From Octopus sinensis (taxonomy: Eukaryota): a DNA stretch of 64,000 nt. Shown here piece by piece: positions 392 to 57,355 of the stretch (position 1 is the first letter of the stretch; each line of letters starts with the position of its first letter). The DNA is taken from NCBI RefSeq assembly GCF_006345805.1, contig NC_043009.1, positions 31,682,001 to 31,746,000 of the forward strand, written 5' to 3'. The notes beneath the pieces were generated by a model, which saw only the letters and a list, made by a program, of their open reading frames with translations, did not search any database and was not told the origin of the DNA. Made by a program: the position numbers and the translations under genes.

Positions 392-2253
392 CATATTTGT
401 AGGTGGTTTGTCCTTGTCGTTTATTTTCACAGAGTATTTCTTCATATGACTTCTGCTGTTTCTGTTTCGCAACCTCACTTCTTGATTTACACTGAGCCCT
501 CTCCATACCTTTCTGGGCTCAAAGCATCGCTCCTCCACTTGCACTCAAATGGAAAGTCAGCAAATTGCTGTCTAATGCTGGAATCATAAAAATGCACCAA
601 TTGTGTGCTCTAAAGCCTTTAGCAAATGAGCAGAAAATGCACAAGGTTCTGTATTTAGCTTCTTTAATGTTGGTGCCATGAGAAAAGGCTCCGAGTCAAA
701 GTGGTTAGCAACAGGAAGAGCATCCAGTTGTTGAACCCTAGCCAAAATGTCCTGAATTAGCACCAAACAATGTGAACAGAACTCTTAATAGCACCATAAT
801 TTGGACAGTATGGAAAATGTATGAAAATGATGATGGTGATGGGGAGGAGGAGGAGGAGGATCATGATGACAGCGTTGATGTTGGTGGTGGTGATGAAGAT
901 GATGATCATGACCATGATAACAATGATAGTGATAATAATGCTGATGCTGGCACTGCTGCTGCTGATGACGATGATGAAAAAGATGTTGTTGTTGATGATG
1001 ATGATGATAATGATGATGACAAGACGATGATGGTGATGATGATGACTGTGAGGATAATGATGGTGAGGATGATGATATTAGTGATTACATTGATAAGGAT
1101 GACGACAATGACGACGCCAACAATGGCAACGGTGATGACTGTGATGACAGCAATGATGGTGATGATGACGATTCCATATCGCTTTTAAGTCCTGTTTTTA
1201 TCATTCGTATTCTTCTTCTCCAGATGACATATGTCACTTTTACAGAGCTAATGCACCAGTTATAATATATCTCTCGCAGTAAAGCTTTTATATTATGAAA
1301 TATTGTTAAATGTTAAATATTGTTAAATATTGTTCTTTAACCAATAATTTCTTCGTAGTTTTCCTCTTATTGTGATGGACACTGTAAGCAGAAGAATGTA
1401 AGTCTTTGTGATGGAGTTTAATCTTTTGAGAGGCCACCATATGTGACATTCACATAACATGCATTTCCTTACATGATTCCATTAAATTCCCACCACAGCA
1501 TGGCTTCTAAATGCTGGGCTGGCAGGTATTTTGTTTGTTTCTGAATGTATGTAATTGCTCCTGGATGATTATAGATTGTGGAAAAATCTTTCCATTTGCA
1601 GGCCCCCTTTGTATGTATCTTTGCTATGGTTGTCACACACTGTTATTTGTCATAGCAAAACATTACATTCTGCGAAGAATCACAACAAGCAAGATATAAA
1701 ATAATTGTTAGTTGTACCTGTGGATCCAAATACCAGCAACAATAACTACTAGCTTTATTAATATTGCTCCCGGGAATCAGTATTGGATTTGTTTCCCCTC
1801 CTTTCTTCACAGATCACTGAGTCAGTATCCGTGTTGTCATTCAGTATGTTGTTCTCTTTGCAATTTTTTTTTTATTATTGTCATCATCAGCATCATATTC
1901 ATCATCATCATTATTGTTATTAGTTGTTGTAGCAATTGTAAAAATGTCAGCAGGGAGGTAATATTAAGCAATGTTATGTTTTTGTTTCTCTCTTAAATTT
2001 TTAAAGCAAGTTCCTGTTTAGATCCTCTCCTTCCTGTTACCAAACTTTAATTTTGAAATGAACAACAGTGAAAAAATTATAATGGATGGAGAGAAACAGC
2101 AGTAACAAAAGGCTACATTGATGATGATGATGATGGTGGTGGTGGGGGTGGGGGTGGTGGTGGTGGTTGTGGTAATAATAATAGTAATAATAATAGGTGA
2201 GACTTGGAGTCAACTTGTACAAATACAAAGCAAAAGTCAAACATATAATAATG

Positions 2254-2295
<42 letters not shown>

Positions 2296-2304
2296 TAATA
2301 ATAA

Positions 2305-2363
<59 letters not shown>

Positions 2364-2671
2364 GTAATAAAATATAACCATCCATAAAATCTACAATAAA
2401 TGTTATAAGATTAATAAAAACTTAATAAAAAGAAACATGAAAACTTATTTAATAAAGACTGCAATGTGTACAACTAACACCAATTTTGTGTATTACATGG
2501 GATTAATATGCACAAACTATATCATTGACATAAAATACAACATTGTACATAAATGAAGTAATCATGTGGGATAAGCAACACTGGCTAAAATAAAGTTTTC
2601 AATAGAAAGAAAACAAAGGGAAACAATCTTGGTAACTACAATTGATATTTGTATTTCATATGAATTCCATG

Positions 2672-5350
2672 ATTGATTGATTGATTCTAGTTTCAGCTTA
2701 TGAGCTGTGGCCATGCTGGGGCACCGCCATTTGGTGTTGCTACTTGGTTTCACTTCATGGAGGCTTTCTAGCAACTGCTATTTGGTGCATGAGAGAGTTC
2801 GATGCAGCTGCCCTCATCTGCCCCTCCTGTCGTGAAGTTGGTTCATCTGGGACACCTGACAGGAAGAGATCCAGCTTCATTTTAAAGACATCTGTATCCA
2901 CCCCATGCAGGTCTCTCAGGTTCTTCGGGAGGATATTGAAGAGCTGTGGGCCTCGGAAGCCCAGGCTATCACAGAATCTTGTCCTACATCTTGATGGCAG
3001 GTTTGGAGTCCTAGGGACCACGCAGTGGCGCCCAGTTCTGGCATTTGCGTAACTCTCGATGCCAAAGTTCAGGACGCTTCCCTCCAGGATCTTCCAGATG
3101 TATATTATGGCATATCTTTCCCGCCTACGCTCCAGAGAATATAATTTTAATCTCTTGAGTCTTTCCCAGTAGCTTACATTCTGCATAGAGGCTATCTTCT
3201 TTGTGTAGCTTCGTTGGATCGCCTCAAGTTCTGTGATCAACTTGACACTGGATGGTGACCATAGCTGAGAGCAATAGTCAAAGTGGCTTAGGACAAGTGT
3301 CTTCCAGAGGATCATCATGGTTTTTTGTTCTCTTGTTCTAAAGGTTCTAAGAATCCATCCAGCCAGCCGTCTACATTTCATTGTCAGTTTAGCAACATGT
3401 ACATGAAAGGTCGCGTCATCACTCATGTGAATACCCAGGTCACGCACTGATTGTGCCTCTGGGATTGCAATCCCTCCGGGTCCAGTGTATTCATTGGGTA
3501 TTGCATTCAGTTTTGCATGCTGATAGTATAAAGCTTGAAACTTTCCAGCATTGAACTGCATGCTATTCTTTTCAGCCCACTTGTATATTTCGTCCAGCTC
3601 ACATTGCAGGTGTTTAGTGTCCTCAGGGTTCTGTATTGCCTGTGAACTTTTGTATCATCTGCATAACTTGTGATCGTGGCTCTCTGCGTGGCTGAGGGCA
3701 TGTCTGAGAGGGCCATTATGAACAGTAGTGGTCCCAGAACAGTGCCCTGCGGAACACCGCTCACTATTTGTGTGTTAATGGAGGTGGCCCCATTGGCTAC
3801 TACCACCTGACTTCTATCCTTCAGAAAGTCATGAAGCCATTCTCCCAGTTTTCCAACTATGTTGAGATCACGCAGTTTGTGACATATCATTCCATGATCG
3901 ACTTTATCAAAGGCCTTTGCAAAGTCGAGATATATCACTTCCACATTTGAGTGGTTGAGCAGCCGTTTCAGCACCCAGTCATAGTGTTGTAGGAGCTGAG
4001 TTAAACAGCTTCTCCCTGGTCGGAAACCATGTTGGGTGTCGGGCAGCAAGTCATTCTCTTCAAGGAAGGTGATCAGCTTCCTTCTGACTATTCGTTCCAT
4101 GACCTTGCTGATGTGTGAGGTCAGAGAGATAGGTCTATAGTTCTTGGCTTCCGCTCTGCTACCTCCTTTATGAATGGGGCATATTTTACCTTCCTTCAGT
4201 TTTCCTGGAAGTTTGCCAGCTGCAAGGAAGCTCTGAAAGAGGAACTGCAGTGGTCTTGCTAGGACTCTCTTACATGCTTTTAGGAGGATTGCCGGGAATC
4301 CATCGGGGCCAGTAGCTGAGTCTGTTTTCATTTCATCTATAGCCTTGGTTACATCGTCTTCCTTTATATCGATGTAATCTATCGTCGCCGCCTCTGATTT
4401 TATATCTGCAGTGGTAAAAAAGTCAGTTGGATTGGTGATTTGGAGATGCCCAAGGGGTGGAGTGAAAACACTCTTGAATTGCTCATTCAGTATTTCACTT
4501 ACCCTCATTGGTTTTCCTGTAAGTGTGCCATCCTTTTCGAGGAGTGGCCCTATTCTACAGTGCACTGTAGCTGTTTCTTTGGCATACCTGTAGAAAGCTC
4601 TGGGGTTAGATTTTATGTTTTCTATAGCCCAGGCTTCTTTGTCTGCTCTTTCTTTTTCATGGGAGAGTTGCAGACATTTTTCGATTTCCAACAGTTTTAT
4701 TTTTAGGCGGGACTTTTCACTGCTTTCAATCTGTTTGTTTAGGCGATTTGAAAATTTCGTACGCCGTCTCATTAAAATTTTCCTCTCTCTGGGGATTTTG
4801 TTCTTGTGTACAGTGGCCTTTCTCTCTGGGACACATTTGTAGCATATGGCTTGCATTACAGACATGAATTGTTGAAGTTTCACGTCGATGTCTGGCGAGG
4901 AGAGACAATTAGGCCAGTTTTGTTTGAGGATCTCTTTCTCAATTTGTTTCCAGTTTGCCTTATGGTAGTTCAAGCTGGAAAGATTTTGAGGGTTTCTTGT
5001 AGGCTGCATGTCCGTGCTCTCTTTTGGCCCGTACATGGTCAGCTCTATCATGTTGTGATCCGAGAGTAGTGTCGGTGTCACTTTCACATTATGGATGAGA
5101 TCCATGTCATTTGTGAAGCAGAGATCCAGTGTGTTACCTGCCCTGGTTGGTTGGAGTATTACCTGCTCCATGTACAGGGTGTTGATGAGGTTCAGGAGGG
5201 ACCTCGCCTGTCCTCGTTCACATCTTGTCATTCCTGGGAGAGAAAGGCCCTCGGGCCATCTGACATTGGGCAGATTGAAGTCTCCCATAAGAAGCACACC
5301 TATGTGTTGTTCTAATGTGGTTAGAATTTCTTCTATTTTTATAAGGCAGT
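2672..5350 (-). mobile_element. CR1/L2-group (Jockey superclade) non-LTR retrotransposon, 5'-truncated, young
   Basis: APE endonuclease C-terminal motifs (GDFN, LDLCFTN, SDHN), RT motifs (GPDG, YRPISLTS, QHGFRPGRSC, YLDFAKAFDKVDH, GVPQGTVLGPLLF, YADD) and C-terminal YSLERRRERY. It has a short 3' UTR and an (AATC)n tail. CATG flanks both ends (2668-2671 and 5351-5354) and may be a short TSD. Confidence 0.95.
2755..5297 (-). pseudogene. LINE ORF2 (partial APE endonuclease plus reverse transcriptase), single -1 frameshift near 3645
   Basis: ORFs 3507..5297 and 2755..3561 join if one base is restored in GTT-(T)CA after YADDTKV, giving SQAIQNPEDTKHLQCELDEIYKWAEKNSMQFNAGK. I saw no other stop in about 2.5 kb. 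Confidence 0.9.
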
Positions 5351-6156
5351 CATGTAATTATTTCACATATAAAATATTGTTTAAATATTGCACACATATG
5401 AAAATGAGGTAGAAATATTTGCTTAAGACAATGAAGCAGGATAAAACAGATTTTTATTTATGCATAAAGCATAAGTAAAAGATTTCAGTAGAAACCAGGG
5501 ATACTTTTTTATATTATATGAATTCCCTGTGTTATTAGACATGTGATATATTGTTTAAACAGCTCATGTAAAGAGACAAATTAATTCAGATTGAGAATGT
5601 TAGATTAGATACAGTCTGTGAAGTCAGGGATTTCGATTAGAACACTCTCTACATATTCTCAAGTGTACATGAAACTGGAAAATTAAAAAAGGAAGATTCT
5701 ACACATGTAGAAAACCGAACTCAATGCTAATCTAGAAAACTGAACTCAATGCTAAAAATAAGATAGGTATAAATACACTGGTTAGAAACTCCAACTGCAA
5801 CATCATAAGCTGGAAGTGAAGGGAACTGGTGTTTGTGGAAAGAAAACTGATAATGGTTTGAAGTTATCACTGCTAAACTGAATATATCTTCACTATGTGT
5901 AACGATAATGCAGTCTGATAAAAATAGATAAGTACTACAAAATAACAATAGTGGAACTAGAAAAATATATTAGACGTAAACAATGGAAAATAACAAAGAA
6001 AAATGTAAAGACCCAAAACTCTTTGCCTTGTTTATAAAAAAGTAATGGAATAAAAACTGGAAACTAAGTGCAGGAAGAGAAAAACATTAGATAAAGGCAA
6101 AACAATAATGTTATAAAAAGTAACAAAAAAAAAAAATAAAAATTTAAATATATCTC

Positions 6157-6378
6157 AACCCTTTAACATTTAAACCAGCCATATCCAGCACAAATGTTCT
6201 GTTTCATGTTCAAAGAGGCCTAGTCTGACCTCTCACACCTACTCTACAATGTCATTCTAAAATTAAATAATCACATCATTGTAATCTTGAAGCTTCGAGA
6301 TAGTGCATGATTAATGCAAAACACTATAAATAAATAAGTATTACATTTGGCAGATTAACCAGAAGGCTAAAGGATTAA
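6157..6378. mobile_element. piggyBac-type MITE (CCC...GGG ends, TTAA-like target), decayed
   Basis: Begins AACCCTTTAAC and ends GCTAAAGGATTAA. The internal sequence matches the host repeat at about 14500-14945. Confidence 0.5.
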
Positions 6379-6804
6379 TGAAAATATTGTAAGGAAAGCA
6401 ACTCTATTGCTAATAATACTCTGTAAAGCACAACAGATGTGAAGCAAATCAGAATAATTCAACAGTAATCAAATGGATTTGGTCTACAAACATTACACTG
6501 CCAGAAAGGCAACCCTACTCAACACAGCTCATCTCCTATAAAAGACAAATTAAGTTCACTAATGAATATAGCTGTTGGTCAAGTTTGATCATGCATTTTT
6601 ATATATATATGTTGTCGATTGCCTCAAAATGTGGAGTAGAGGAACAGCCAACAACTGATGAACGGTCATTCTTTATGCTACTTGTCTTGTTTTCTATTTG
6701 TTTCTCTCGATCACATACCCAGGTTTGTGTTTGTATTTCATATTGTTTACGTTTTGTGGTGCCCTGTACCCATATATGCTTATATATATATGCATATATA
6801 TATA

Positions 6805-13945: not shown

Positions 13946-14625
13946 TAAAATAAAATAGATAATAACAATAAAAAAAAGACCATCAACAAAGAACACTTTA
14001 AGAAACTTAAGTAAACATTATTAAAAGACAAAAAAGAGAAAAAAAATTAAAAGCAACGAAAAGATTTGCACTAATTAAAGTTTAGTGAAAAAAATCCAGC
14101 AAAGATCTTGGCATTCAAAGTCAAATATAATTGTTGTATTTTGTTTAGGTTCAAGGTAGGAAAATCTTTTATTTAGGTAGGAAGGTCTTTCATTTAGATT
14201 TAGGTGAAGGATAAAGGAGAATTCCTGACATTCTAAAATGGCATTAGAACTATAATTGAAGTGAGATGATTTTTAATTTCACAATCAAAACATTCTTTGA
14301 AGTCATTTGCATTATTGTTATTTAGTTCTTCAAATTCTGTAGTTGATTTTAGCCAATAGAGCTTAAGCCATGCTGAAGCTGCACCTCAAATGTTCAACAA
14401 AGTTAAACAAAATATGGATCTGTTATAGAGATTTTGCACTATTTATTTGGTGGAACTGATTGTCCTGAACCTTGGTTAAAATCTAGCATACAGTTAGTTT
14501 TTTAAAAACTTTTACCTATTAAACCAACCATACTTAACCAAAATGTTCTTTCTGTTTATATCCAAAGTGACCAGATCTGACCCCTCACACCTGCCCTACA
14601 ATTTCAGTCTAAAAATCAACAATCA

Positions 14626-14831
14626 ACAAGCTTACGGCCATATCATGTTGAAAGCACCGGTTCTTGTCCGATCACCGAAGTTAAGCAATGTCGAGCCTAG
14701 TTAGTACTTAGATGGGTGACCGCTTGGGAAACCTAGGTGCAGTAAGTGTAACATATCGTTTTGAATGGCAGTGCCCCAGCATGGCCACAGCTCATGAGCT
14801 GAAACTAAATGAAAATGAAAAAATGAAAATG
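14626..14831 (+). mobile_element. 5S rRNA / LINE-3'-tail chimeric retroelement (candidate SINE3-type)
   Basis: 5S, then a 16-nt linker, then 44 nt (14764-14807) matching the LINE 3' end (2688-2731, reverse complement) at 42/44, then an (AAATGA)n tail. AATCA is duplicated at 14621-14625 and 14832-14836, and the insert splits a MITE. Confidence 0.75.
14630..14747 (+). rRNA. 5S rRNA-derived sequence, full length (retroposed copy or SINE head)
   Basis: GCTTACGGCCATATCATGTTGAAAGCACCGG...CCGAAGTTAAGC...TTAGTACTTAGATGGGTGACCGCTTGGGAA...GTAAGT. Box A and box C are recognisable and the helix I ends pair (GCTTAC/GTAAGT). It is a single copy outside any array. Confidence 0.9.
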
Positions 14832-17800
14832 AATCACATCATTTAAATCCCAAAGCTATGAAATAATGCATGATTAATTTAAACCAATGTGAATAAATAA
14901 ACATTGGATTTGACAGAGTAATCTGAATGCCGAAAGACTAAGCTTATCTTAAACTTGGTTTACTCTCAGTTATTTTCAAATCAAGATTAAAATCTAGACT
15001 TCATTTCGTATCTTGAACCTACATTAAATATTATGCTACAGTTTATTATCTCGAAACTAAGTTTAAATTTGGATTACAACCAATTGAAAATCTAGTTAAT
15101 GGTCAGTTAACTTTCAACTGACATAAAAAGAAAGGTTTATTAGTTGCAATAAATGTAAATCTGAGCCTAAGTCTGGTAACGGTTATTTTTAGTAAATCTA
15201 AGTCAAATACTCAGAATCCAAGAAAAATGTGGAATATTCTAGATTGACCATAATTGTTTTCCTCTCTTATTTTTTATCTCCCAAAGTTGTTGCTATTGTT
15301 GTTTAAGCATAGGTCAGGTTGATTTAACAGATCTTTGAGGAAACACATTCCATCTACATCCATCTTGTCTTCTTATGTGCAGGAAATTAAGGAATGTGTT
15401 ATCCAATGTGTTTTAGTCTAAAATATTAGGTGTCCTTTGAGAGAGGTTTTGTTGCTATTTCTATCAGGTCAAATGACTGCATGATTTCACAGAGGTGCCC
15501 ACATTGCTTCATTTCGACAGAATGTGTGAACAAGTGTATTATTGGTGGCAGATTCTCAGAGATCCAGTCACAAGTTCACTGACCTGACCTTCAAGGAGAA
15601 AGAACGACTGGGGTTTATTTGTAACTCAGCACAGAATAAGTATCACAAAGGAATTCATTTGGAAATAAAATCCAAATTTGACCATTTGACTGCGAGAGAA
15701 GGATAATAATTCAAACTTTTTAATACATGCATCTTCTGGTTTTAGATGAGGTGACCTTAAGCTTAAATACCAAGTTGACTTTCTTAACATATTAGTAGCA
15801 GTGTGACTATTGGTGCCAGTATGCAGGTGTTGTATGTGGTTGTCTTGTGGTTGTTCTTTTGGCAGTAGCAGTAGAATTATTGGTGTTTTTTGGCACCAGA
15901 CTACTTGAACTTTACAATGCAAATTGCTTAACACATTCTTAACAGCATTAGTTGCTAAATCATGATTTTTCTATAAGTGGATGCCACTCTTAATGCCAAC
16001 CATTTAATAGAGCTTATATCTTATTTTAAGGACTCATGGCACCAGCAAATAGAATGGAAAAGGTGTGGTCCCAGACGATAGCAAGGGAGGTGCACTGGAA
16101 CAGACCATCATATATAATTATGTGTAATTAAGCCGTTATACAATTTGCACAAGTATTTTCCCTCAGTAATAATCTCCATGAAGGTACAATAGAGGTAGAG
16201 AACACAAGAAAGGTGACAAAAAGAAGAAATTTAAAGCAAGCTGAAGCATCTGAATGAAGGAGATGGCAAGAGTCTGAGAAATGTGTTAGAAGAGAGCTCA
16301 TCTGTTGGCATATGTAGGTGAGGGACTTTACACCTATTAATCTATTAGTTGAATAGAGAGGGTTGCAGAATAGATTTTTTAAAAATAAACCGAACTTCTT
16401 TTATTGAGGAGATATTTCTATACTCAGTCAGATTCTGAATCAACCAAAGAATTCTGCTAATACTGGTTAATTTTGTTTCTTACAGGTTCATTTCAAGGTG
16501 TTTATTTCAAGGTGTTTCTGGCACATTCAGGAAACAGTCATTTCTTTATTGTCCTTGTCCACAGCGAGCTAAACATAGAGGGGACGAACAAGGACAGATA
16601 AAGGGATTAAGTCGATTACATCAACCCTAGGGCATAACTGGTACTTATTTAATCGACTCCAAAAAAGATGAAAGGCAAAATTGAATTTGAACCCAGAACT
16701 TAATGGCAGACGAAATACTGCTAAACATTTCGCCCAGCATACTAACGATTCTGCCAGCTCACCACCCTACATTCATGAAATATTGTCAAAGCTAGCAGAA
16801 TCTCAAGTTCCCTTCTTTCTTTTTTTATTATTCTTACATAGACTTTCACAGATTTGTGAAAAGCAGATAATATATATGTTTTAAACATTAGCTAAACCAT
16901 TTTAACTGCATGAGTGGAATATTGTTTTCAAGTTTTGACACAAGACTAGCCATTTGAGTAGAGGTGGAGGGGGGTGTAAGGCAATTACATTGACCCCAGT
17001 GTTCAACTGGTACTTCTTTTATCAACCCCAAAAGAATGAAAGGCAAATTCGACCTTGGTGAAATTTGAACTCAAGAAATCATGAAATGCTACCAGGCAGT
17101 TTATTGCCTTATCGTGGAATATTAAAATATATGCTTTTTTTTAATATATTTTAATATTTATTCCACATCATTTGTGGTCCACCTTCATCTAAAACCTTAA
17201 GCAGCAGCTTACTGGGATTATCTATTAATCCAGGCTAAAAATCACATAAACTTTGTTTGCCAAATCAGGATGCCAAACTAAATATATGTCTATTATAGAA
17301 TATACAGTTTTGTATATAGAAGACGATGTTCTATCACCAACAAATATTTCTAAATTTATTCGATCACCAATGAGTTGTGACATTCTTTTACTTCTAATTA
17401 CACGGAGACGGCAATGTAAAAGGATTTAGAAATTAGGAATGGTAAACACAGCAATATGTCTTCACATTAGCTGGAATGGAAAGACAAATGTCTATGGGTG
17501 TAAAAACTAAATTGACGGAGCATGAAATGATTGCTAGATGTGATAGATATTGTTAAATCAAAACAAATAGATGACATGGCGCTGATGTGATTTTACAACT
17601 GTTTGCAACAGACGCAGAGAATCTTGTCTATCGTCTATATTGATTTGTCTGATAAATATTTCTTTAAGATAACTAAACTGAGAGAATTTTTACAGATTTT
17701 CCTCTTTTTCTGTGCCTACAAAATAAGTAAATGAAGAAAAAAAACAGTAAAAAGAAAATAAAATGTAAAATAAATAAAAATTGTTTTGTTTGTGAAGTAA

Positions 17801-36894: not shown

Positions 36895-37920
36895 TGTATA
36901 TGTATATGTATATATACATATGTACATACTGATATGCACTCATATTACTATATACATATATAACCATATACTCATATATATACTCAAACACATAGTGACT
37001 GATAGCCACAAACATACACGTGTGCGCACACACACACACACACACACATACACACACACTATTCCATGACACACAGTCCCACAGCACACAGATACTCGTG
37101 TGAACCCAATAGAGTCAGAACCCTTCCCGCCCAAACACCAATATACACGCATCCACATCCACATAGAGACACATAAATGCACACACACACATATATAAAC
37201 ACATAAAACCAGCATTCACATACACACTCGTATTCAACACATTTACACACACACATTCAACACACATCTACTCATATATAATCCTTCACACATTCTCATG
37301 GGTCTACTTTTGTAGCAACACACATCCACCAAATTTGCATATATACACATGCATGCACACACATAAACAGCTATGCACGTACACCGCATCCTACATACAT
37401 CCACCCCTATACACACGCACGCACGTGCATATATTAGTGAGAGTAATTTAGTTTGAAAGCCAGTCACTTAAGCCAGTGCCATCTAACCATTCATAAATCA
37501 TTGTCTCAAAAACCACCTTAGACAATACTTCGCATAAGCGATCAAGCATGAACCAAGCTAAGCAGGAGAGAGAGAGAGTGGAGGGGGAGGAGGGCCATTG
37601 GGTAGGTGGGTGGGAAGGGAGGGGTGGAAGGATGGGGAGGAGAAGAAGAGGAGGAGCATAACATTAACCTTTTTTTTCTTTAACTGTTGTGTCTAATAAG
37701 TGTCCATGTTGTTGTTGTTGTTGGTGGTGGTGGTCGAAGTGATGCTGGTGGTGGAGATGGCGTTGTGTTCGAACCAGTTGAGCGGCTACTGCACTGCCAT
37801 CATCACCATCATTATCAACAACATTACAAATGGTAAGGATGATGATGATGTTGATGATGGTGGTGGTATTAGTGAGGCAGAGGAGGAGATGACAATGAGG
37901 GTGATGGTCATGTTGATGAC

Positions 37921-37960
<40 letters not shown>

Positions 37961-38228
37961 ATGATGGTTTTGAAGATAAAATGCTGGTGATGATAGTGAA
38001 GATAATGATATTCATGATGATGATGATAATGATGATAATGATAATGATAATTATAATGATCATGAAGATGTTACTGCAGATCGCAATACTGTTGCTGCCA
38101 CTACTGCTGCTGCTGCTGCTGCTACTACTGCTTGCTGCTGATGAGGAGGATTATGATGATGATAATGATTATAATGATGAAGATACTGGTGACAATAGTG
38201 ATGATGGTGATGATGATGATGATGATGT

Positions 38229-38274
<46 letters not shown>

Positions 38275-38320
38275 GGTGATGATACTAATGATGATGATGA
38301 TGATGATGAAGGTGATGATA

Positions 38321-38351
<31 letters not shown>

Positions 38352-38410
38352 CGGTAATGGTGATGATGTAGTTATTTTTGTAATGGTAGCAGTGGTGGTG
38401 ATGACTGTGG

Positions 38411-38451
<41 letters not shown>

Positions 38452-38637
38452 TGATGATGATGATGATGGTGATAATGATGATGCTGATGATGATACCTTT
38501 GCTATCATGAATATAAATATTACTATTTTCTCATTTGTCGGTCAGTTTTCAGGTTTCCCTAATTCAACCTACTACAGACAGTCTCAAGTTAGAACAAATT
38601 ATTTTGAATATCTATCTTTGTATGTGTGTGTGTGTAA

Positions 38638-38670
<33 letters not shown>

Positions 38671-39714
38671 ATATAAATATGTATATGTATATGTATATAT
38701 ACATATGTACATACTGATATGCACTCATATTACTATATACATATATAACCATATACTCATATATATACTCAAACACATAGTGACTGATAGCCACAAACAT
38801 ACACGTGTGCGCACACACACACACACACACACATACACACACACTATTCCATGACACACAGTCCCACAGCACACAGATACTCGTGTGAACCCAATAGAGT
38901 CAGAAGCCCTTCCTGCCCAAACACCAATATACACGCATCCACATCCACATAGAGACACATAAATGCACACACACACATACACACATATATAAACACATAA
39001 AACCAGCATTCACATACACACTCGTATTCAATACATTTACACACACACATTCAACACACATCTACTCATATATAATCCTTCACACATTCTCATGGGTCTA
39101 CTTTTGTAGCAACACACATCCACCAAATTTGCATATATACACATGCATGCACACACATAAACAGCTATGCACGTACACCGCATCCTACATACATCCACCC
39201 CTATACACACGCACGCACGTGCATATATTAGTGAGAGTAATTTAGTTTGAAAGCCAGTCACTTAAGCCAGTGCCATCTAACCATTCATAAATCATTGTCT
39301 CAAAAACCACCTTAGACAATACTTCGCATAAGCGATCAAGCATGAACCAAGCTAAGCAGGAGAGAGAGAGAGTGGAGGGGGAGGAGGGCCATTGGGTAGG
39401 TGGGTGGGAAGGGAGGGGTGGAAGGATGGGGAGGAGAAGAAGAGGAGGAGCATAACATTAACCTTTTTTTTCTTTAACTGTTGTGTCTAATAAGTGTCCA
39501 TGTTGTTGTTGTTGTTGGTGGTGGTGGTCGAAGTGATGCTGGTGGTGGAGATGGCGTTGTGTTCGAACCAGTTGAGCGGCTACTGCACTGCCATCATCAC
39601 CATCATTATCAACAACATTACAAATGGTAAGGATGATGATGATGTTGATGATGGTGGTGGTATTAGTGAGGCAGAGGAGGAGATGACAATGAGGGTGATG
39701 GTCATGTTGATGAC

Positions 39715-39754
<40 letters not shown>

Positions 39755-40022
39755 ATGATGGTTTTGAAGATAAAATGCTGGTGATGATAGTGAAGATAAT
39801 GATATTCATGATGATGATGATAATGATGATAATGATAATGATAATTATAATGATCATGAAGATGTTACTGCAGATCGCAATACTGTTGCTGCCACTACTG
39901 CTGCTGCTGCTGCTGCTACTACTGCTTGCTGCTGATGAGGAGGATTATGATGATGATAATGATTATAATGATGAAGATACTGGTGACAATAGTGATGATG
40001 GTGATGATGATGATGATGATGT

Positions 40023-40069
<47 letters not shown>

Positions 40070-40119
40070 TGATGATGATGATGATAATGATGATGATGAT
40101 GATGATGAAGGTGATGATA

Positions 40120-40153
<34 letters not shown>

Positions 40154-40212
40154 CGGTAATGGTGATGATGTAGTTATTTTTGTAATGGTAGCAGTGGTGG
40201 TGATGACTGTGG

Positions 40213-40250
<38 letters not shown>

Positions 40251-40428
40251 GCTATAACGATGGGGATAATGATGATGCTGATGATGATACCTTTGCTATC
40301 ATGAATATAAATATTACTATTTTCTCATTTGTCGGTCAGTTTTCAGGTTTCCCTAATTCAACCTACTACAGACAGTCTCAAGTTAGAACAAATTATTTTG
40401 AATATCTATCTTTGTATGTGTGTGTGTG

Positions 40429-40455
<27 letters not shown>
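36862..40455. repeat. Tandem duplication of a ~1.79 kb unit bounded by (TA)n tracts
   Basis: Near-identical sequence at an offset of 1785-1794 (e.g. 37243/39037, 37700/39494, 38507/40301). (TA)n lies at about 36862, 38640 and 40435. The copies differ by a few SNPs and by microsatellite structure. Confidence 0.95.
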
Positions 40456-40477
<22 letters not shown>

Positions 40478-41384: not shown

Positions 41385-43050
41385 GCAAGTATTACCAGTC
41401 GAGAACTCCGCATACTGGAAGCCAGCAAGTGTATGGGGTCATCAAGAGAGAATGTGTGCTATTTCAGGGCCTACCTCTTGGCGGCATCAATACGCACCAG
41501 TCTCCCTCACTGATATGAGGATCTGCTTGCTAGTTAACCAGTTATCAAATAAAGCTCAATATTCTTCTAGCTATCTCTCATCATCTCCTTTTAACCAAAT
41601 CCAGTGGCTAGCCTTTTCCACTGTAGTTTGGATATCTTTTATGGTGGTATTTACTTTACAATGAATTAGGCCTAACGATAACAACAGTTGTCTCACACTG
41701 TATCCAACAAACCCTCTACATCTGACTTCAGTTGGAAAATGCTCCGCTTTCCATCCTGTATCGTCACATTCCTCGAGGTGGCTTACAAAACGGTCAATCT
41801 TTCGAGCCCAAGTGGCGTCCATGTTATCTTCACGAGGAACTGTTAACTTGACTAGATTCACAGCTTTCTTTCTTTCACACCACATTAAAATGTCCGGCTT
41901 TTTTGTAACTGGGATGGGAAAGAGTCCCTGGCACACTGGTACATCTGCAGTCACTTCCCAATAGCTGTTGGATTTTTCATCACTCACAAGAAGTTTGTTG
42001 TTCTTCTTGAAATGGATCCATAGTCCTGAGCGCACAAAGGTAATGAAATCTCTAGTAGGTTTCAATGGTTTTTTTCAATGGTTTTTCAAAGGTTTTTTTT
42101 TCAATGGTTTTTTTTCAATGGTTTTTCAATGGTTTTTTTTACTGTTGTTGAGATCAATTTGGTTCTCTATAGCATTGAAGATAACCTTAAGGACTAGGTT
42201 GTGTCTCGATGTATACCTGTTCAATGCTAGTGAACATGTGGAAAGAATATGTTTCAGTGTGCTGACCTTTCTGCATTTGCATATATCATTCTCTGAGACA
42301 TTCCATCTTACAAGCTTTGCAGGTGATGGCAAAACATCATAGGATGAACGAATCAGAAAACTTAGCCGATATGTGATCCACCTCCATATCTCATCCCAAC
42401 TTATTTTTCTCTCAAAAGCATGCTTCTTCCATCATGTCACTTGTCCTTCTTGAATTCATTGGATCAAATGAAGCTCTCTTCTCTCTGCTTCTCTCATTTT
42501 GAGAGATCTGCGTTCACTCCCCATCATACTTGCAAATGGTCTGAATTGATCTGTGTCAAAACCAAGTTCCTTTTGATGAATTTGCATTGCACTCACCATA
42601 TCTCGGTGAGAAGACAGGATGTCATCAGTCTCTGCTTCTGTTTTCACATCTGGTGGATTATGCCTGATTTCCATGTCTCAGCATCATCATCATTCGTACC
42701 TTCCCCAGTTTATAAATCTCGACTATTGACGCCAGTGGTAACTGAAATGAGCTTGTTTTACGATAAGGAGCTGAACTGTTCAATACCCAAGGTAGGCCTA
42801 GCCATTTTCTATTGAACACATTACATTTTGTTCAATGATTTGAACTCCTGACAATGCTACCTCGTATATTAAAAGTGACCACAAAAGTTGCAGATACAAG
42901 CTGAACTTTTATATTTACCTGGTTATCAATCGCTGATAATGCAACCTCAGCTTGTTTCATAATTTTCATTCCGCAACTCCTATCTGACACAGCACTAGCA
43001 CTTCTTGCATGGCACAAATTTAAGGAGTGGTCACTGAGATACTTGTAAAA
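41385..43050 (-). mobile_element. HERO-like non-LTR retrotransposon (RLE type), decayed 3' half
   Basis: Frames give RKWLGLP...FQLPLASIVE, WDEIWRW...SFLIRSSYDVLPSP, a CCHC knuckle (CKCRKVSTLKHILSTC...RHN) and the RLE motif KPDIL...KLTVPREDN...EVRCRGF. Many stops and frameshifts are present. Confidence 0.8.
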
Positions 43051-50010: not shown

Positions 50011-51251
50011 TCAGTAGTTTTATTTTTTATAGCGTGCTTTCACTTCACTACCAAGCGCAGCTCTGTGTGCCTTGGGTATGTGCTGTGATTTGTTGTGATG
50101 CTCTGATGGTTACTGTATGTAAAATGTTCTGCGTAGGATGTGTGCAGTGCCTAGTAGTGCAATTTTCTGTATGTTATATGTGTTTGTAAGTCCTGGTGTT
50201 TTTGTTATGTATTTGTCTGAATATTTTTTATCATGCCTAATGCACCTACTATGATAGGAATTGTTTCTGTTTTTAGATTCCAAATTCTGGTTACCTCCAT
50301 TTCCAGGTCTTTGTATTTTGAAAGTTTCTCCATTTCTTTTAGAGACACGTTGTCATCTGCCGGTATTGATACATCAATTAGAAAGCATTTTTTTCTTCAT
50401 GATCTCTGACAACTATATCTGGTCCGTTGGCCTTAATTTCTCTATCTGTGTGTATCGGCATATCCCAGAGTATGGTTGCTTTTTCGTTTTCTGTGACCTT
50501 TTCTGGTGTGTGCCTATACCATCTTTTTTCTGTTGTTATTCCATAATGTTTGCATAGCTTCCAGTGTATGTAGGTTCCAACTCTGTCATGTCTGAATATA
50601 TTCCTTCTTAGCCAGGACTGGGCAGCCAGAGATAATATGATTTATTGTTTCTTGTCCATCTCCACATATTCTGCAGTTACTTGTTATATTTCTTTTCATT
50701 ACATGTTTTTGGTAATTTCTGGTGGGGAGGCTTTGGTCTTGTGCTGCAATTAAAAATCCCTCTGTCTCTGCTTTGAGTCCTGAGCTTCTCAACCATTGCT
50801 GGGATTTTTCTTTGTCTATTTCTTTTGCATTTAGTTTAGTCCAGTATTTACCACGAAGGGCTTTTTCTTGCCATCGTTTTATCATGGTTCTTTGCTGTTC
50901 TAGTTTTAGTTTGGATTTCATTTGTTTTATAGCTTTTGTTGTTTCTTCATCATCTTCTTCTTCTTCTTCTTCTTTATATTTGTTAGGTGGTATGATTTCT
51001 TGTTTATATTTGTCAGCTTCCTTAAATACTGAGAACAGTTTTTTGTTTTGCTCGTGTTTTGCTGCTATTTGTATCAGTTTTCCTTCCTTCTGAAGTAGAT
51101 ATTTTTGCAGTCCTATGGTGGTTATTTTATAGTAGTTTTCCAGCTGTATACGGCCTCTACCACCTTCTATACATTGTATATATAGTCTTTCTATGTCAGA
51201 TTTTGGGTGATGCATCCTAGACCCTGTCATTATTTTTCTTGTTTTCCTATC
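50011..51251 (-). mobile_element. R4/Dong-like retrotransposon, 5'-truncated (thumb, CCHC knuckle, RLE)
   Basis: DRKTRKIMT...HHPKSDIERLY...GGRG, LKAETEGFLIAAQDQSL, CRICGDGQETINHIISGC, RHDRVG, PDIVV...LIDVSIPAD...IIVGALG...LLGTAHILR. A few frameshifts are present and (TAA)n lies at both ends. Confidence 0.9.
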
Positions 51252-51261
51252 TATTATTATT

Positions 51262-51309
<48 letters not shown>

Positions 51310-51408
51310 GTTGTTGTTGTTATTATTGTTATTATTATTGTTATTATCATTATTATTATTATTATTATTATCATTATTATTATTATTATCATTATTATTA
51401 TCATTATA

Positions 51409-51455
<47 letters not shown>

Positions 51456-51510
51456 TATCATCATCATCATGATCATCATCATCATTATCATTATTATTAT
51501 TTTTAATATT

Positions 51511-51551
<41 letters not shown>

Positions 51552-51831
51552 TATTATTATTATTATTAATATTTTTATTATCATTATTATTATTATTATC
51601 ATTATTATTATTATTGTTATTATTATTGTTATTATTATTATTATTATTATTATCATTATTATTATCATTATTATTATTATTATTATTATTATCATCATCA
51701 TCATCATCGTCATCATCATCATCATCATCATTATCATTATTATTATTGTTATTATTATTATCATCACCATCATCATCATCATCATCATCATCATCATAAT
51801 CATCATTATTATTATTATTATTATTATTTTT

Positions 51832-51877
<46 letters not shown>

Positions 51878-51928
51878 TTATTATTTTTATTATTATTATT
51901 ATTATTATTATCATCATCATTATTATTA

Positions 51929-56153: not shown

Positions 56154-57355
56154 TGAGTTACATTCCAGAAGTTTTTTTTTTACTTTTCGGAAGAGGGGCA
56201 GCTGTAACTGATTTAGGTTATTGTAATTTAAGTCTATCATCACTATATTTCTAATAAGCTGACATGCCAACTTTGTCACTCCAAATTGAAGGAGATGGCT
56301 GTAGCAGCACTTTGAGCACACCCTACTAAACATTGCTCGTCAAAGCTGACTAGTTTGCAGAATGCGATTGGGACACAAACCTTGCTGTGCAAATAAAGTT
56401 TCATGATAAACTGGGCAAAATCGAAACTTATGAAATTCTCTGTTTATGGATCGACTTTGTCTGAGGCTGGCATCTGTCATTCACTGGTAAAAAAGTTCAA
56501 GAATGGCAGAGGAAAAATGAGAGACGATGAAAGGTGGGGGAGGGAGAAGGAAGTCAGAATATCTGAAATGGTTGAGAAAATTTGCAGTTTTCTAGATGAA
56601 GACTGTGATGTGTCTGTAAAGACAATAAATGTACATTTTAAAGTTGGAGTGGCAACTGTAGACGTAATTATTCATGAGGATCTGAACATGCACAAAATTT
56701 GTGCTAAATTTGTTTGCAGGAGGCTCAGAGAAGAGCACCCTGATATGCTGAGACCCCCTTCGGTCATGTCTGACCGTGGGATTGCACCTAGAAAGCTACC
56801 CTCTCAGGCACCCGGGCAAGGTTGTTTAAGGAAGACCAGCAATCGCCCATGCATACCGGCCTCCCCTCTCCACGCCACCAGTGTTATCCAAGGGAAAGGC
56901 AACGGCCGATACAACTTGGCACCTGTGACGTCGCAACTCATTTCTACAGCTGAGTGAACTGGAGCAATGTGAAATAAATTGTCTTGCTCAAGAACACAAC
57001 ACGCAGCCCGGTCCGGGATTCGAACTCACAACCTCACGATCGTAAGGTCGACGCACCCTGATAACCAATTACATAATAGAGATGGGCATCAAAACTACCC
57101 CCTCACCCTTCCTACGGACCCCCCTTCAAGCTGAAGAATAACTTCAGAGGTAGTCGTTTTGAAGATGAAGGAGTCTGTGACAAGGGTCCAAGACACCTTC
57201 ATTTTGGAGGAGTCTTTTGTGAAGCAGCTGGAGTGCTACATCACGTGCATTAAAGTCAGAGGGTTCTGCTTCGAAGGAGATTAGAACTTTGTACTTCCTA
57301 CAAATTAATAAATGTCTTTCCTGAAAAAATCTCAAGACTTCTTGGATGCACCTTG
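56154..57355 (+). mobile_element. Mariner (Tc1/mariner) transposon remnant with internal deletion and SINE insertion
   Basis: Translations give ...DDERWGR...IIHEDLNMHKICAKFV, EMGIKTTPHPSY and RGSRFED...CIKVRGFCFEGD*. The terminal inverted repeats are degenerate (16/23 matches counting the flanking TA), with TA at 56152 and 57356. Confidence 0.85.
56746..57052 (-). mobile_element. Young SINE family C copy with 11-bp TSD
   Basis: CpG-rich copy flanked by GCACCCTGATA at 56735-56745 and 57053-57063. Confidence 0.9.

What the first reader, a model, noticed from the sequence alone, without database searches (positions are those of the whole stretch)
14621..14836. Full-length 5S rRNA fused to the local LINE's 3' tail: candidate 5S-derived SINE
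Seen: a complete 5S sequence (14630-14747), a 16-nt linker, 44 nt matching the LINE 3' end at 42/44, an (AAATGA)n tail and an AATCA duplication. It interrupts a MITE whose empty form is visible at about 6157-6378. Established: SINE3-type elements pair a 5S head (type 1 Pol III promoter) with a CR1/L2-type LINE tail. Inference: this is either a SINE3-like family or a one-off template-switch chimera. The octopus SINEs I know of are tRNA-derived, but I cannot confirm novelty. Caveat: a T4 run at 14759-14762 could terminate Pol III before the tail.
Basis: partly seen in the sequence, partly recalled or inferred. Interest (0 to 1): 0.8.

Follow-up and report, generated by a model that had tools for sequence, protein, structure and literature searches.

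The report
5S rRNA fused to LINE tail
A complete 5S ribosomal RNA transcript, terminator included, was retro-copied into this octopod genome joined to the 3' recognition tail of a local LINE; this is the ground plan of a 5S-derived SINE, a known kind of mobile element, but whether it is one copy of a family or a single accident could not be tested here.

Summary
Rfam finds one full-length 5S rRNA (14630-14748, 101 bits). A 14-nt trailer ending in T4 follows it. Next come 44 nt that match the 3' end of the LINE at 2686-5351(-) at 42/44, and a sister LINE copy (L001) at 55/58. Then comes an (AAATGA)n tail. The 206-bp unit sits between AATCA duplications inside a ~220-bp repeat whose empty paralog is at 6157-6379.

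New points:
- The "linker" looks like the native 3' trailer plus Pol III terminator of a 5S gene. Native 5S genes in related marine contigs carry a T4 run 8-11 nt after the gene. So the 5S part is a complete primary transcript, from +1 to the U-run.
- The LINE tail is a conserved box plus a hairpin with compensatory changes, then GAAAC and a microsatellite. The window's abundant SINE copies share this module.
- The LINE lineage has two ORFs, so it is CR1/L2-like and not RTE.

Copy number, which decides between a SINE family and a one-off chimera, could not be tested: no cephalopod nucleotide collection was available. A published count of about 24,000 5S-derived loci in giant squid, plus a sampling argument, tilt towards a family (about 0.55). 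The intact internal T4 argues the other way. This is a new member of a known kind, of moderate interest.

The parts
14621..14625 (+). Left target-site duplication AATCA
   Evidence: The left flank aligns to the empty paralog up to its AATCA at 6269-6273.
14626..14629 (+). Four extra bases (ACAA) at the 5' junction. They are absent from the empty site and are not part of 5S.
   Evidence: Their origin as untemplated or junctional nucleotides is inferred.
14630..14748 (+). Full-length 5S rRNA copy (head), which includes the region of the type 1 Pol III internal control elements
   Evidence: Rfam RF00001, 101 bits, model positions 1-120. About 90% identical to native 5S genes L006-L009, which score 107-122 bits. 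Differences from those genes mostly keep base pairs.
14749..14762 (+). 3' trailer TAACATATCG plus T4 (14759-14762). Read as the native trailer and Pol III terminator of the source 5S gene.
   Evidence: Native 5S genes L008/L009 have ATCTTAA+TTTT+G after the gene, and L007 has TTTCATTTTT. That the octopod's own 5S genes look like this is inferred.
14763..14807 (+). LINE 3' module. Conserved box/hairpin 1 is about 14766-14787. Hairpin 2 has stems 14788-14792 and 14797-14801 with loop CATG. GAAAC is 14801-14805.
   Evidence: 42/44 to the window LINE and 55/58 to L001. The hairpin 2 pairs are kept in 93.8% of cells across 13 LINE/SINE tails, and 2 of 5 pairs show compensatory changes. Slid controls give 1.5-37% pairing.
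14807..14831 (+). (AAATGA)n-like microsatellite tail
   Evidence: TRF. L001 ends in the similar GATAAAATGAAAA.
14832..14836 (+). Right target-site duplication AATCA
14506..14941 (+). Host ~220-bp interspersed repeat (MITE-like), interrupted by the insert
   Evidence: Flanks are about 79% identical to 6157-6379. Weak terminal inverted repeat.
6157..6379 (+). Paralogous copy of the host repeat without the insert (empty site)
2686..5351 (-). Local copy of the partner LINE. It is 5'-truncated and frameshifted, and its 3' end is hairpin + GAAAC + (AATC)n.
   Evidence: Pfam RVT_1 and Exo_endo_phos_2. ORFs. 90% identical to L001 positions 543-3210. 3' end.

Best explanation
The 206-bp insert (14626-14831) is a LINE-mediated retrocopy with the full architecture of a 5S-derived (SINE3-type) SINE.

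Its head is a whole primary 5S rRNA transcript, from +1 through a short 3' trailer to the U-run of the Pol III terminator. The head is joined directly to the last ~45 nt of a CR1/L2-like LINE plus that LINE's microsatellite. Those ~45 nt are a conserved box, a covarying hairpin and GAAAC, which together form the module this LINE lineage and the abundant local SINEs share.

Most likely history:
1. A founding event joined nascent 5S RNA to the LINE's 3' end. This probably happened when the LINE reverse transcriptase switched template after copying its own 3' recognition module.
2. The resulting element keeps the 5S internal promoter. Pol III can transcribe it, with read-through of the weak T4, into the tail.
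3. The LINE enzyme can recognise that tail in trans and copy the RNA into new sites.

I take this copy to be one member of such a multi-copy family, inserted by target-primed reverse transcription with a 5-bp duplication.

Shown: the parts, their order, the single-event insertion, and the conserved, structured tail module.
Inferred: the template switch, Pol III read-through, trans-mobilisation, and above all that other copies exist.
For: Anatomy and insertion:
- Full-length 5S.
- Tail matches the LINE 3' end at 42/44, and a sister copy at 55/58 including the microsatellite.
- One AATCA duplication flanks the whole unit, and an empty paralog exists.

Tail as a recognition module:
- Four LINE relatives (57-90% amino-acid identity, including Argonauta) and seven SINE copies in the window keep it.
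- The hairpin shows compensatory changes: CG/UA, CG/CG and UA/CG.
- The same tail architecture therefore already mobilises non-autonomous elements in this genome.

The 5S head:
- It is near-intact and keeps its helices.

Copy number (indirect only):
- The giant squid genome paper PMC6962438 reports about 24,000 loci above the Rfam 5S threshold in 2.7 Gb, 'likely SINEs'. That is roughly one per 110 kb.
- Sampling inference: if the window is a random sample of a genome of a few gigabases, the chance of meeting one of a few dozen sporadic chimeras in 64 kb is about 1e-3 or less. For a family of thousands it is several percent to tens of percent.

Precedent:
- 5S-headed SINEs with LINE tails are established: SINE3, HaSE3, CoeSINE5.
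Against: - No second copy was seen. There is one 5S in 64 kb and none in 22 kb of Argonauta.
- An intact T4 lies between the promoter and the tail. It should stop many Pol III transcripts before the tail. As far as I know, successful SINEs normally lack internal T>=4 runs.
- The head is a complete 5S with a native-looking trailer. That is what a fresh, direct copy of a cellular transcript looks like. It is unlike the diverged, promoter-only heads of described SINE3 families.
- Native 5S genes in related contigs have a conserved upstream TATA-like block. 5S retrocopies may therefore be poorly transcribed on their own.
- The sampling argument assumes the window was picked at random.
Confidence: 0.55

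Rival explanations
1. This is a one-off or sporadic chimeric retropseudogene. During one LINE retrotransposition event the reverse transcriptase copied the LINE RNA's microsatellite and last ~45 nt. It then switched template onto the 3' U-run of a nascent, unprocessed 5S transcript and copied it to its 5' end. The cDNA was integrated with a 5-bp duplication and 4 junctional bases. The product is transcriptionally inert or terminates at its own T4, and it never amplified. This is the CR1-like counterpart of the human U6/L1 and 5S/L1 chimeras.
For: - Both ends of the 5S part coincide with the RNA termini: +1, and the U-run of a terminator placed as in native 5S genes.
- The T4 is intact.
- The 5S is full-length and structurally near-intact.
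- The LINE part differs from a sister LINE copy at only 1 of 44 positions.
- A single target-site duplication surrounds the composite.
- Chimeras of small Pol III RNAs with LINE 3' ends are documented. Of 253 in human, 10.5% involve 5S, and each is an independent event that does not propagate.
- No 5S SINE is described for octopus in the papers searched.
Against: - Such events are rare. There are a few dozen 5S/L1 chimeras in the human genome, mostly antisense and truncated. Meeting one in a random 64-kb window is therefore unlikely.
- Giant squid has about 24,000 5S-derived loci.
- The fusion keeps exactly the minimal recognition module, as SINE tails do.
Confidence: 0.38
2. Two sequential events: a dispersed 5S gene or pseudogene with its own 3' flank already sat here, and a severely 5'-truncated LINE copy later inserted just behind its terminator.
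For: The trailer plus T4 looks like genomic 3' flank of a 5S gene. An 11-mer upstream of the 5S matches native 5S upstream sequence.
Against: - The empty paralog shows that 5S, trailer, tail and microsatellite are all absent together.
- The two flanks abut on one AATCA. No separate duplication flanks the LINE part.
- The upstream 11-mer belongs to the host repeat, since the paralog has a similar sequence.
- The 5S part starts exactly at +1, apart from 4 junctional bases, as an RNA copy would.
Confidence: 0.04
3. A functional, dispersed 5S rRNA gene that merely lies next to a LINE fragment.
For: High Rfam score. A promoter-like 11-mer lies at the native distance upstream.
Against: - It is a single copy inside an interspersed repeat, with retroposition hallmarks.
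- It scores 6-21 bits below native genes, with changes in the conserved GGGAAUAC region.
- It lacks the native TATA-like block.
Confidence: 0.03

Closest known systems
SINE3 (5S rRNA-derived SINEs; zebrafish SINE3-1, Kapitonov & Jurka 2003, cited in PMC5786205 and PMC10886601)
   Same: A 5S-derived head with a type 1 Pol III promoter is joined to the 3' tail of a CR1-like LINE. The element is short, non-autonomous and flanked by duplications.
   Different: Here the head is the whole 5S, including its 3' trailer and T4 terminator, and there is no body domain. Copy number is unknown. The host is a cephalopod.
HaSE3 (Lepidoptera), CoeSINE5 (coelacanth), 5S-Sauria: 5S heads with RTE tails (PMC5786205, PMC3272025)
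   Same: An independent birth of a SINE by fusing 5S to a LINE 3' end of about 40-50 nt.
   Different: Their partner is RTE, which has a single ORF. The LINE lineage here has a long ORF1 with CCCH zinc knuckles in relatives and a hairpin-plus-microsatellite end. Those families also carry extra body segments.
U6/L1 and 5S/L1 chimeric retrogenes of mammals (Buzdin et al. 2002/2003; bioRxiv 10.1101/2025.02.02.635956; PMC6789731)
   Same: A small Pol III RNA in sense orientation is fused 5' to a truncated LINE 3' end in a single insertion with a duplication. As with U6, the small RNA is complete down to its U-run.
   Different: The partner is a LINE with a structured 3' end and a microsatellite tail, not poly(A)-tailed L1. 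Human 5S/L1 chimeras are mostly antisense and truncated. Those chimeras do not propagate.
About 24,000 5S rRNA-derived loci in the giant squid genome (PMC6962438)
   Same: A cephalopod genome with very many 5S-derived copies, suggested to be SINEs.
   Different: That paper gives only a count from Rfam hits, with no anatomy, partner LINE or junction. It concerns a decapodiform, not an octopod. Homology to this element is untested.
Octopus tRNA-derived SINEs OK, OR1, OR2 (Ohshima & Okada 1994; 'OK SINE/tRNA-Core')
   Same: The abundant SINE copies in this window share the same 3' module: GTGCCCCAGCATGGCC, a hairpin, GAAAC and an A-rich repeat. They presumably use the same LINE group.
   Different: The head is different (not 5S). 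Their hairpin sequence is CAGTC/GACTG, against CAGCT/AGCTG here. I could not confirm that the window's SINE copies are OK/OR, because no reference sequence was at hand.

Membership tests
SINE3 / 5S-derived SINE | 5' head derived from 5S rRNA and carrying the internal (type 1) Pol III control region | tested here: met
   Rfam 5S_rRNA, full length, 101 bits. The region covering boxes A, IE and C is about 90% identical to native genes L006-L009. Promoter activity itself was not tested.
SINE3 / 5S-derived SINE | 3' tail shared with a partner LINE present in the same genome | tested here: met
   42/44 to the LINE at 2686-5351(-) and 55/58 to L001. The tail module is conserved, with a covarying hairpin.
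SINE3 / 5S-derived SINE | Retroposition hallmarks: target-site duplication and a precise empty site | tested here: met
   AATCA on both sides. The flanks are contiguous in the paralog 6157-6379.
SINE3 / 5S-derived SINE | Dispersed multi-copy family: many copies with the same head-tail junction and different flanks | not testable with these tools
   No cephalopod nucleotide collection was available. Junction scans of the metagenome, prokaryote-genome and viral collections found nothing relevant. A control pattern for the octopod LINE/SINE tail was run on the prokaryote-genome and viral collections only, and both lack it. ORF-based searches were empty.
SINE3 / 5S-derived SINE | Pol III can transcribe from the head through the LINE tail (no efficient terminator in between) | tested here: inconclusive
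   A T4 run lies at 14759-14762 between head and tail. The next T4 is at 14973. T4 can be leaky (general knowledge), so this weakens the claim but does not exclude it.
LINE-mediated chimeric retrocopy (template-switch type) | The 5' partner is a cellular small RNA in sense orientation that ends at its own RNA 3' end | tested here: met
   The 5S part runs from +1 to the U-run of a terminator placed as in native genes. The octopod's own 5S 3' flank was not available, so the match to 'native' is by analogy.
LINE-mediated chimeric retrocopy (template-switch type) | The 3' partner is a 5'-truncated LINE 3' end, and one duplication surrounds both partners | tested here: met
LINE-mediated chimeric retrocopy (template-switch type) | The junction is unique in the genome (independent event, no propagation) | not testable with these tools
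   Same limitation as for copy number.
CR1/L2-group LINE (partner element) | APE endonuclease plus RT in ORF2, a separate ORF1, and a 3' end with a stem-loop and short tandem repeats instead of poly(A) | tested here: met
   Pfam RVT_1 and Exo_endo_phos_2. Best PDB relatives are LINE-1 ORF2p and R2. ORF1 of at least 406 aa lies upstream in L010, and a homologous CCCH-knuckle ORF overlaps the ORF2 start in L005. 3' ends.
CR1/L2-group LINE (partner element) | Phylogenetic placement of the RT within the CR1/L2 group | not tested
   No reference set was at hand. The C-terminal motif FDYCSQLWSP...LE.IQR..TK.I...SY.ERL..L.L.SLE.RR resembles CR1 from memory only.
RTE-clade LINE (considered for the partner) | Single ORF of about 1000 aa with no long ORF1 | tested here: not met
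   Relatives L005 and L010 have an upstream ORF1. The 3.2-kb L001 contig is simply cut 44 nt before ORF2.
Functional 5S rRNA gene | Native genomic context (array or upstream TATA-like block) and a canonical sequence | tested here: not met
   It is a solitary copy inside an interspersed repeat. It lacks the TATATAA block seen in L007-L009. It scores 6-21 bits below native genes.

The most novel reading that the evidence does not exclude
This is a copy of an uncharacterised, young 5S-derived SINE family of octopods. It would be the first 5S SINE with described anatomy in cephalopods or molluscs. It still carries the complete primary 5S transcript with its terminator, so the founding template-switch junction would still be readable. 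The same process may explain the roughly 24,000 unexplained 5S-derived loci reported in giant squid. A further twist is possible: the host repeat supplies, at the native distance, an 11-mer identical to the upstream element of native 5S genes. That could make this particular copy transcription-competent.
Probability: 0.45. Interest if true: 0.55.

Novelty: new member of a known kind. Interest (0 to 1): 0.4.

Why it matters
SINEs are thought to be born when a LINE reverse transcriptase jumps from its own 3' end onto a small Pol III RNA. In established families the founding junction is usually eroded. Here the junction is clean: +1 of 5S, the whole gene, its trailer, the terminator U-run, then the minimal LINE recognition module.

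If copies with this same junction prove numerous, three things follow. The family would give a case of SINE birth that can be dated. It would provide a natural test of how much an internal T4 limits SINE transcription. It would also give a concrete model for the unexplained excess of 5S-derived loci in cephalopod genomes.

If the junction is unique, it is an ordinary chimeric retropseudogene. It would still show that a LINE with a structured 3' end and microsatellite tail makes the same kind of chimeras as mammalian L1.

Tried and rejected
1. Junction ORF searches. I translated the reading frames that span the 5S-trailer-tail junction and searched for them as spurious proteins. There was no candidate in the 5.8-billion protein set. 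The 1.84-billion representative set gave only weak matches I took to be spurious; I did not inspect them. This is uninformative, because octopod DNA is barely represented: the LINE itself has a single hit at 90% identity or more.

2. DNA pattern scans for 5S 3' end, gap, tail.
- Metagenome contigs gave one hit with no Rfam match, which I read as a chance match in a coding-looking contig.
- Prokaryote genomes and viral contigs gave none.
- A control pattern for the octopod LINE/SINE tail, run on the prokaryote-genome and viral collections only, is also absent there. Those two negatives carry no weight. No such control was run on the metagenome collection.

3. Exact look-up of ten window ORFs to identify the source assembly: none is on record. 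The nearest named relative of the LINE is from Argonauta hians, at 57%.

4. RTE hypothesis for the partner LINE. It was suggested by the 3.2-kb L001 contig and by the octopus RTE literature. I rejected it because relatives carry an upstream ORF1.

5. Tail derived from the abundant SINE instead of the LINE. Rejected: the hairpin and downstream sequence match the LINE, not the SINE.

6. Helix I G.A mismatch as a sign of decay. Rejected: native genes L007-L009 have the same GGTGCAGTAAG.

7. The Octopus vulgaris 5S rRNA paper (PMC326244) is not held. The octopod's own 5S sequence and 3' flank therefore remain unknown.

8. The RepeatMasker table of the O. vulgaris transcriptome (supplement of PMC9115989) has no SINE3 or 5S-class entries in the stored part. 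This is weak evidence, since it is a Pol II-biased transcriptome and the file is truncated.
Full report
**Observation**

The window is AT-rich (65% A+T) and packed with repeats. Rfam's gathering-threshold scan gives exactly one hit: a 5S rRNA at 14630-14748 (+). It covers model positions 1-120 with 101 bits, against a threshold of 38.

Directly after it comes TAACATATCG, then TTTT (14759-14762), then G. From 14764 to 14807 the sequence matches the 3' end of a LINE on the minus strand at 2688-2731 with 42 of 44 identities. A 39-nt core with up to 3 mismatches occurs twice in the window, against none in 100 shuffles. An (AAATGA)-like microsatellite follows at 14807-14833.

The flanks belong to a ~220-bp interspersed repeat with a second copy at 6157-6379, about 79% identical. 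The left flank aligns up to 14625 and the right flank from about 14827. Both end on the paralog's single AATCA at 6269-6273. The unit 14626-14831 (206 bp) was therefore inserted as one piece with a 5-bp duplication. Four bases (ACAA) at the 5' junction belong neither to the target nor to 5S. Only the linker length (14-15 nt, not 16) and the strength of the 'MITE' label need adjusting; the repeat has a weak 14-nt inverted repeat.

**The partner LINE**

Window 2686-5351(-) is a 5'-truncated, frameshifted LINE copy with APE-type endonuclease and reverse transcriptase domains. Its closest relative in the protein collection (P0001, 90%) sits on a Logan contig, L001. L001 aligns to the window copy over its positions 543-3210. 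The nearest named relative is from Argonauta hians at 57%, so the window is octopod.

L001's 3' end reads ...AATGGCGGTGCCCCAGCATGGCCACAGCTCATGAGCTGAAACTAGATAAAATGAAAA. It matches the insert over 58 nt (55/58), including the start of the microsatellite. The tail was therefore taken from this LINE family, from a subfamily closer to L001 than to the local copy.

I first suspected an RTE element. The contig is 3.2 kb with one ORF, and the octopus literature stresses RTE. But a 66% relative (L005) has an open frame with a CCCH zinc knuckle running into the start of ORF2. A 43% relative (L010) has an upstream ORF1 of at least 406 aa with homologous knuckles. The lineage has two ORFs. With its stem-loop and microsatellite 3' end, it is CR1/L2-like in architecture. 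Its clade was not placed phylogenetically. A CR1-like C-terminal motif is recognised from memory only.

**The tail is a structured recognition module**

I aligned the insert's tail with four LINE 3' ends (window copy, L001, L005, two Argonauta copies in L003) and seven copies of the window's abundant SINE-like repeat. The alignment shows:
- an almost invariant box, GGTGCCCCAGCATGGCC, which can itself form a hairpin;
- a 5-bp stem;
- GAAAC;
- a family-specific A-rich repeat.

The stem is CAGCT/AGCTG in the insert and its LINE, CAGCC/GGCTG in Argonauta, and CAGTC/GACTG in the SINE. Across the alignment, 93.8% of cells pair, and 2 of 5 pairs carry double compensatory changes. No shuffle out of 500 reaches the covariation score. 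Sliding the partner by 1-3 columns drops pairing to 1.5-37%.

The SINE copies are related to each other, so the number of independent events is about two or three, not nine. This is the pattern known for LINEs that recognise their own 3' end and mobilise SINEs through it (Kajikawa & Okada 2002, cited). The insert carries the entire module. Its hairpin and downstream bases match the LINE and not the SINE, so the tail was not borrowed from the SINE.

**The 5S head and the 'linker'**

No octopod 5S gene was available. I searched the protein collection with peptides that the 5S sequence would encode if mis-called as an ORF. This recovered four native 5S genes on marine metagenome contigs (L006-L009). 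They are about 90% identical to the window's 5S and score 107-122 bits.

They give three results:

1. The only non-canonical pair that Infernal flagged in helix I comes from GGTGCAGTAAG, which L007-L009 share. It is native and not decay.

2. Most differences between the window copy and these genes keep base pairs, through wobble or a compensated change (for example column 70 with 105). The copy therefore derives from a functional 5S. It scores 6-21 bits lower and has two changes in the conserved GGGAAUAC stretch, so a few post-insertion substitutions are possible.

3. Native genes do not terminate flush with the gene. L008 and L009 read ...GTAAGC ATCTTAA TTTT G, and L007 reads ...GTAAGTG TTTCA TTTTT. 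A paper on bivalve 5S rDNA likewise places the T-rich stretch a few residues downstream.

The window's ...GTAAGTG TAACATATCG TTTT G has the same layout. I therefore read the 'linker' as the native 3' trailer plus Pol III terminator. If the G at 14763 is the LINE's A (an A-to-G change) or an added base, the join lies exactly at the end of the U-run. The 5S part is then a complete primary transcript, bounded by the RNA's own 5' and 3' ends. The step from analogy to the octopod's own gene is an inference.

**Mechanism**

The structure is what one reverse-transcription event would produce. It starts on the LINE RNA's microsatellite, copies the 45-nt module, and continues on the 3' end of a nascent 5S RNA up to its 5' end. 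The alternative is an RNA joined beforehand; ligation has been shown for U6/L1 (PMC6789731).

Mammalian U6/L1 and 5S/L1 chimeras are the documented precedent. The most recent survey counts 253 in human, 10.5% of them with 5S. Each is an independent event that does not propagate, and the 5S ones are mostly antisense and truncated. The same kind of event is also the accepted origin of SINEs. 5S-headed SINEs with LINE tails are known from fish, coelacanth, reptiles and moths. The open question is therefore whether this locus is a primary chimera or a secondary copy of an amplifying element.

**Family or one-off**

This cannot be settled with the tools at hand. None of the searchable nucleotide collections contains cephalopod DNA. 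Junction patterns found only one metagenome hit with no Rfam match, which I read as chance, and nothing elsewhere. A control pattern for the octopod LINE/SINE tail, run on the prokaryote-genome and viral collections, is absent from both. ORF-based tricks failed. The window's ORFs are not on record.

For a one-off:
- the T4 between promoter and tail is intact, and it is the only T4 before 14973;
- the head is pristine and complete;
- native genes carry a conserved upstream TATA-like block, which suggests that retrocopies are weakly transcribed.

For a family:
- the element is a minimal but complete SINE;
- the same tail architecture already drives a very abundant SINE here, with seven copies in 64 kb;
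- the giant squid genome paper reports about 24,000 loci above the Rfam 5S threshold in 2.7 Gb and suggests they are SINEs, without describing them;
- if the window is a random sample, meeting one of a few dozen sporadic chimeras in 64 kb of a genome of a few gigabases has a probability near 1e-3 or less, while meeting a member of a family of thousands is not unusual.

I weigh these as about 0.55 for a multi-copy family and 0.38 for a sporadic chimera. The rest goes to sequential insertion or a functional gene. The empty site and the duplication argue against both of those.

**An unexplained detail**

The 11 bases AGTCTAAAAAT at -24 to -14 of the 5S start are host-repeat sequence. They are identical to the 11-mer at -23 to -13 of the native genes L008 and L009, where they follow the conserved TATATAA. 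An exact match of this length, within 3 nt of register, occurs at 2.2e-4 of all window positions. No further flank similarity exists. It may be chance in AT-rich DNA. If it is a real upstream element, this copy would be better placed than most to be transcribed.

**Comparison and novelty**

In function and anatomy this is a SINE3-type element or its founding chimera. Membership in 'SINE' fails on nothing that was tested, but the defining multi-copy criterion could not be tested. The internal T4 leaves the transcription criterion inconclusive.

The papers I could search describe only tRNA-derived SINEs for octopus, and Ceph-SINEs for squid and cuttlefish. None describes a 5S SINE for any mollusc. 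The squid count shows that the phenomenon has been glimpsed. I could not consult Repbase or Dfam.

I rate it a new member of a known kind, with moderate interest. The most useful products of this work are three readings:
- the linker as the native trailer and terminator;
- the covarying tail hairpin shared by the LINE, the SINE and the chimera;
- the correction that the partner LINE has two ORFs, so it is CR1/L2-like and not RTE.

Noticed in passing
window 14606-14616 (compare L008 743-753, L009 648-658): AGTCTAAAAAT lies upstream of the retro-copied 5S, inside the host repeat. It is identical to the 11-mer at nearly the same distance upstream of native 5S genes in marine contigs. The empirical frequency of such a match is 2.2e-4. 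It is either chance or a promoter-like element.
   Followed up: partly
window 8970, 19839, 30314, 30789 (+); 46958, 28773, 25312 (-): There are seven copies of an abundant SINE-like repeat. Each ends in GTGCCCCAGCATGGCC, the hairpin CAGTC-AAAT-GACTG, GAAAC and an (AAAAGAAT)-like repeat. This is the same 3' module as the LINE, with compensatory stem changes. ARAGORN finds no intact tRNA in the window. Identity with the published octopus SINEs OK/OR was not checked.
   Followed up: partly
window 37000-38673 and 38785-40466: A tandem duplication of at least 1.69 kb at 98% identity. It may extend upstream of 37000. It explains the identical ORFs at 37981-38454 and 39775-40173.
   Followed up: partly
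window 2686-5351 (-): The LINE copy is 5'-truncated at position 543 of the L001 reference and frameshifted near 3507-3561. Its microsatellite is (AATC)n, whereas the sister copy L001 and the chimera have AAATGA-type repeats. The tail repeat therefore varies between copies of one family.
   Followed up: yes
L005 1-330; L010 2-1222: Relatives of the LINE carry an ORF1 with CCCH zinc knuckles (C-x7-8-C-x5-6-C-x3-H) and no Pfam match. It overlaps the ORF2 start in a different frame.
   Followed up: partly
window 50586-51920 (-), 41571-42065 (-), 56403-56957 (+): Further transposon-like ORF fragments: a retroelement C-terminal part with a Cys-rich motif behind a long low-complexity run, an unassigned 164-aa ORF, and an ORF that looked transposase-like by eye. 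None was run against any database or analysed further.
   Followed up: no
L007 288-593: The called gene on this marine contig reads straight through a native 5S gene, and the locus does not translate to the recorded protein under table 11. It may have been called under a different genetic code. It is a spurious ORF over an rRNA gene in the public protein set.
   Followed up: no
window-wide: Very dense microsatellites and low-complexity tracts: 272 TRF rows, including long (TGA)n, (ATT)n, (TAA)n and (AGAT)n arrays. No convincing host exon appears among ORFs of 110 aa or more.
   Followed up: no
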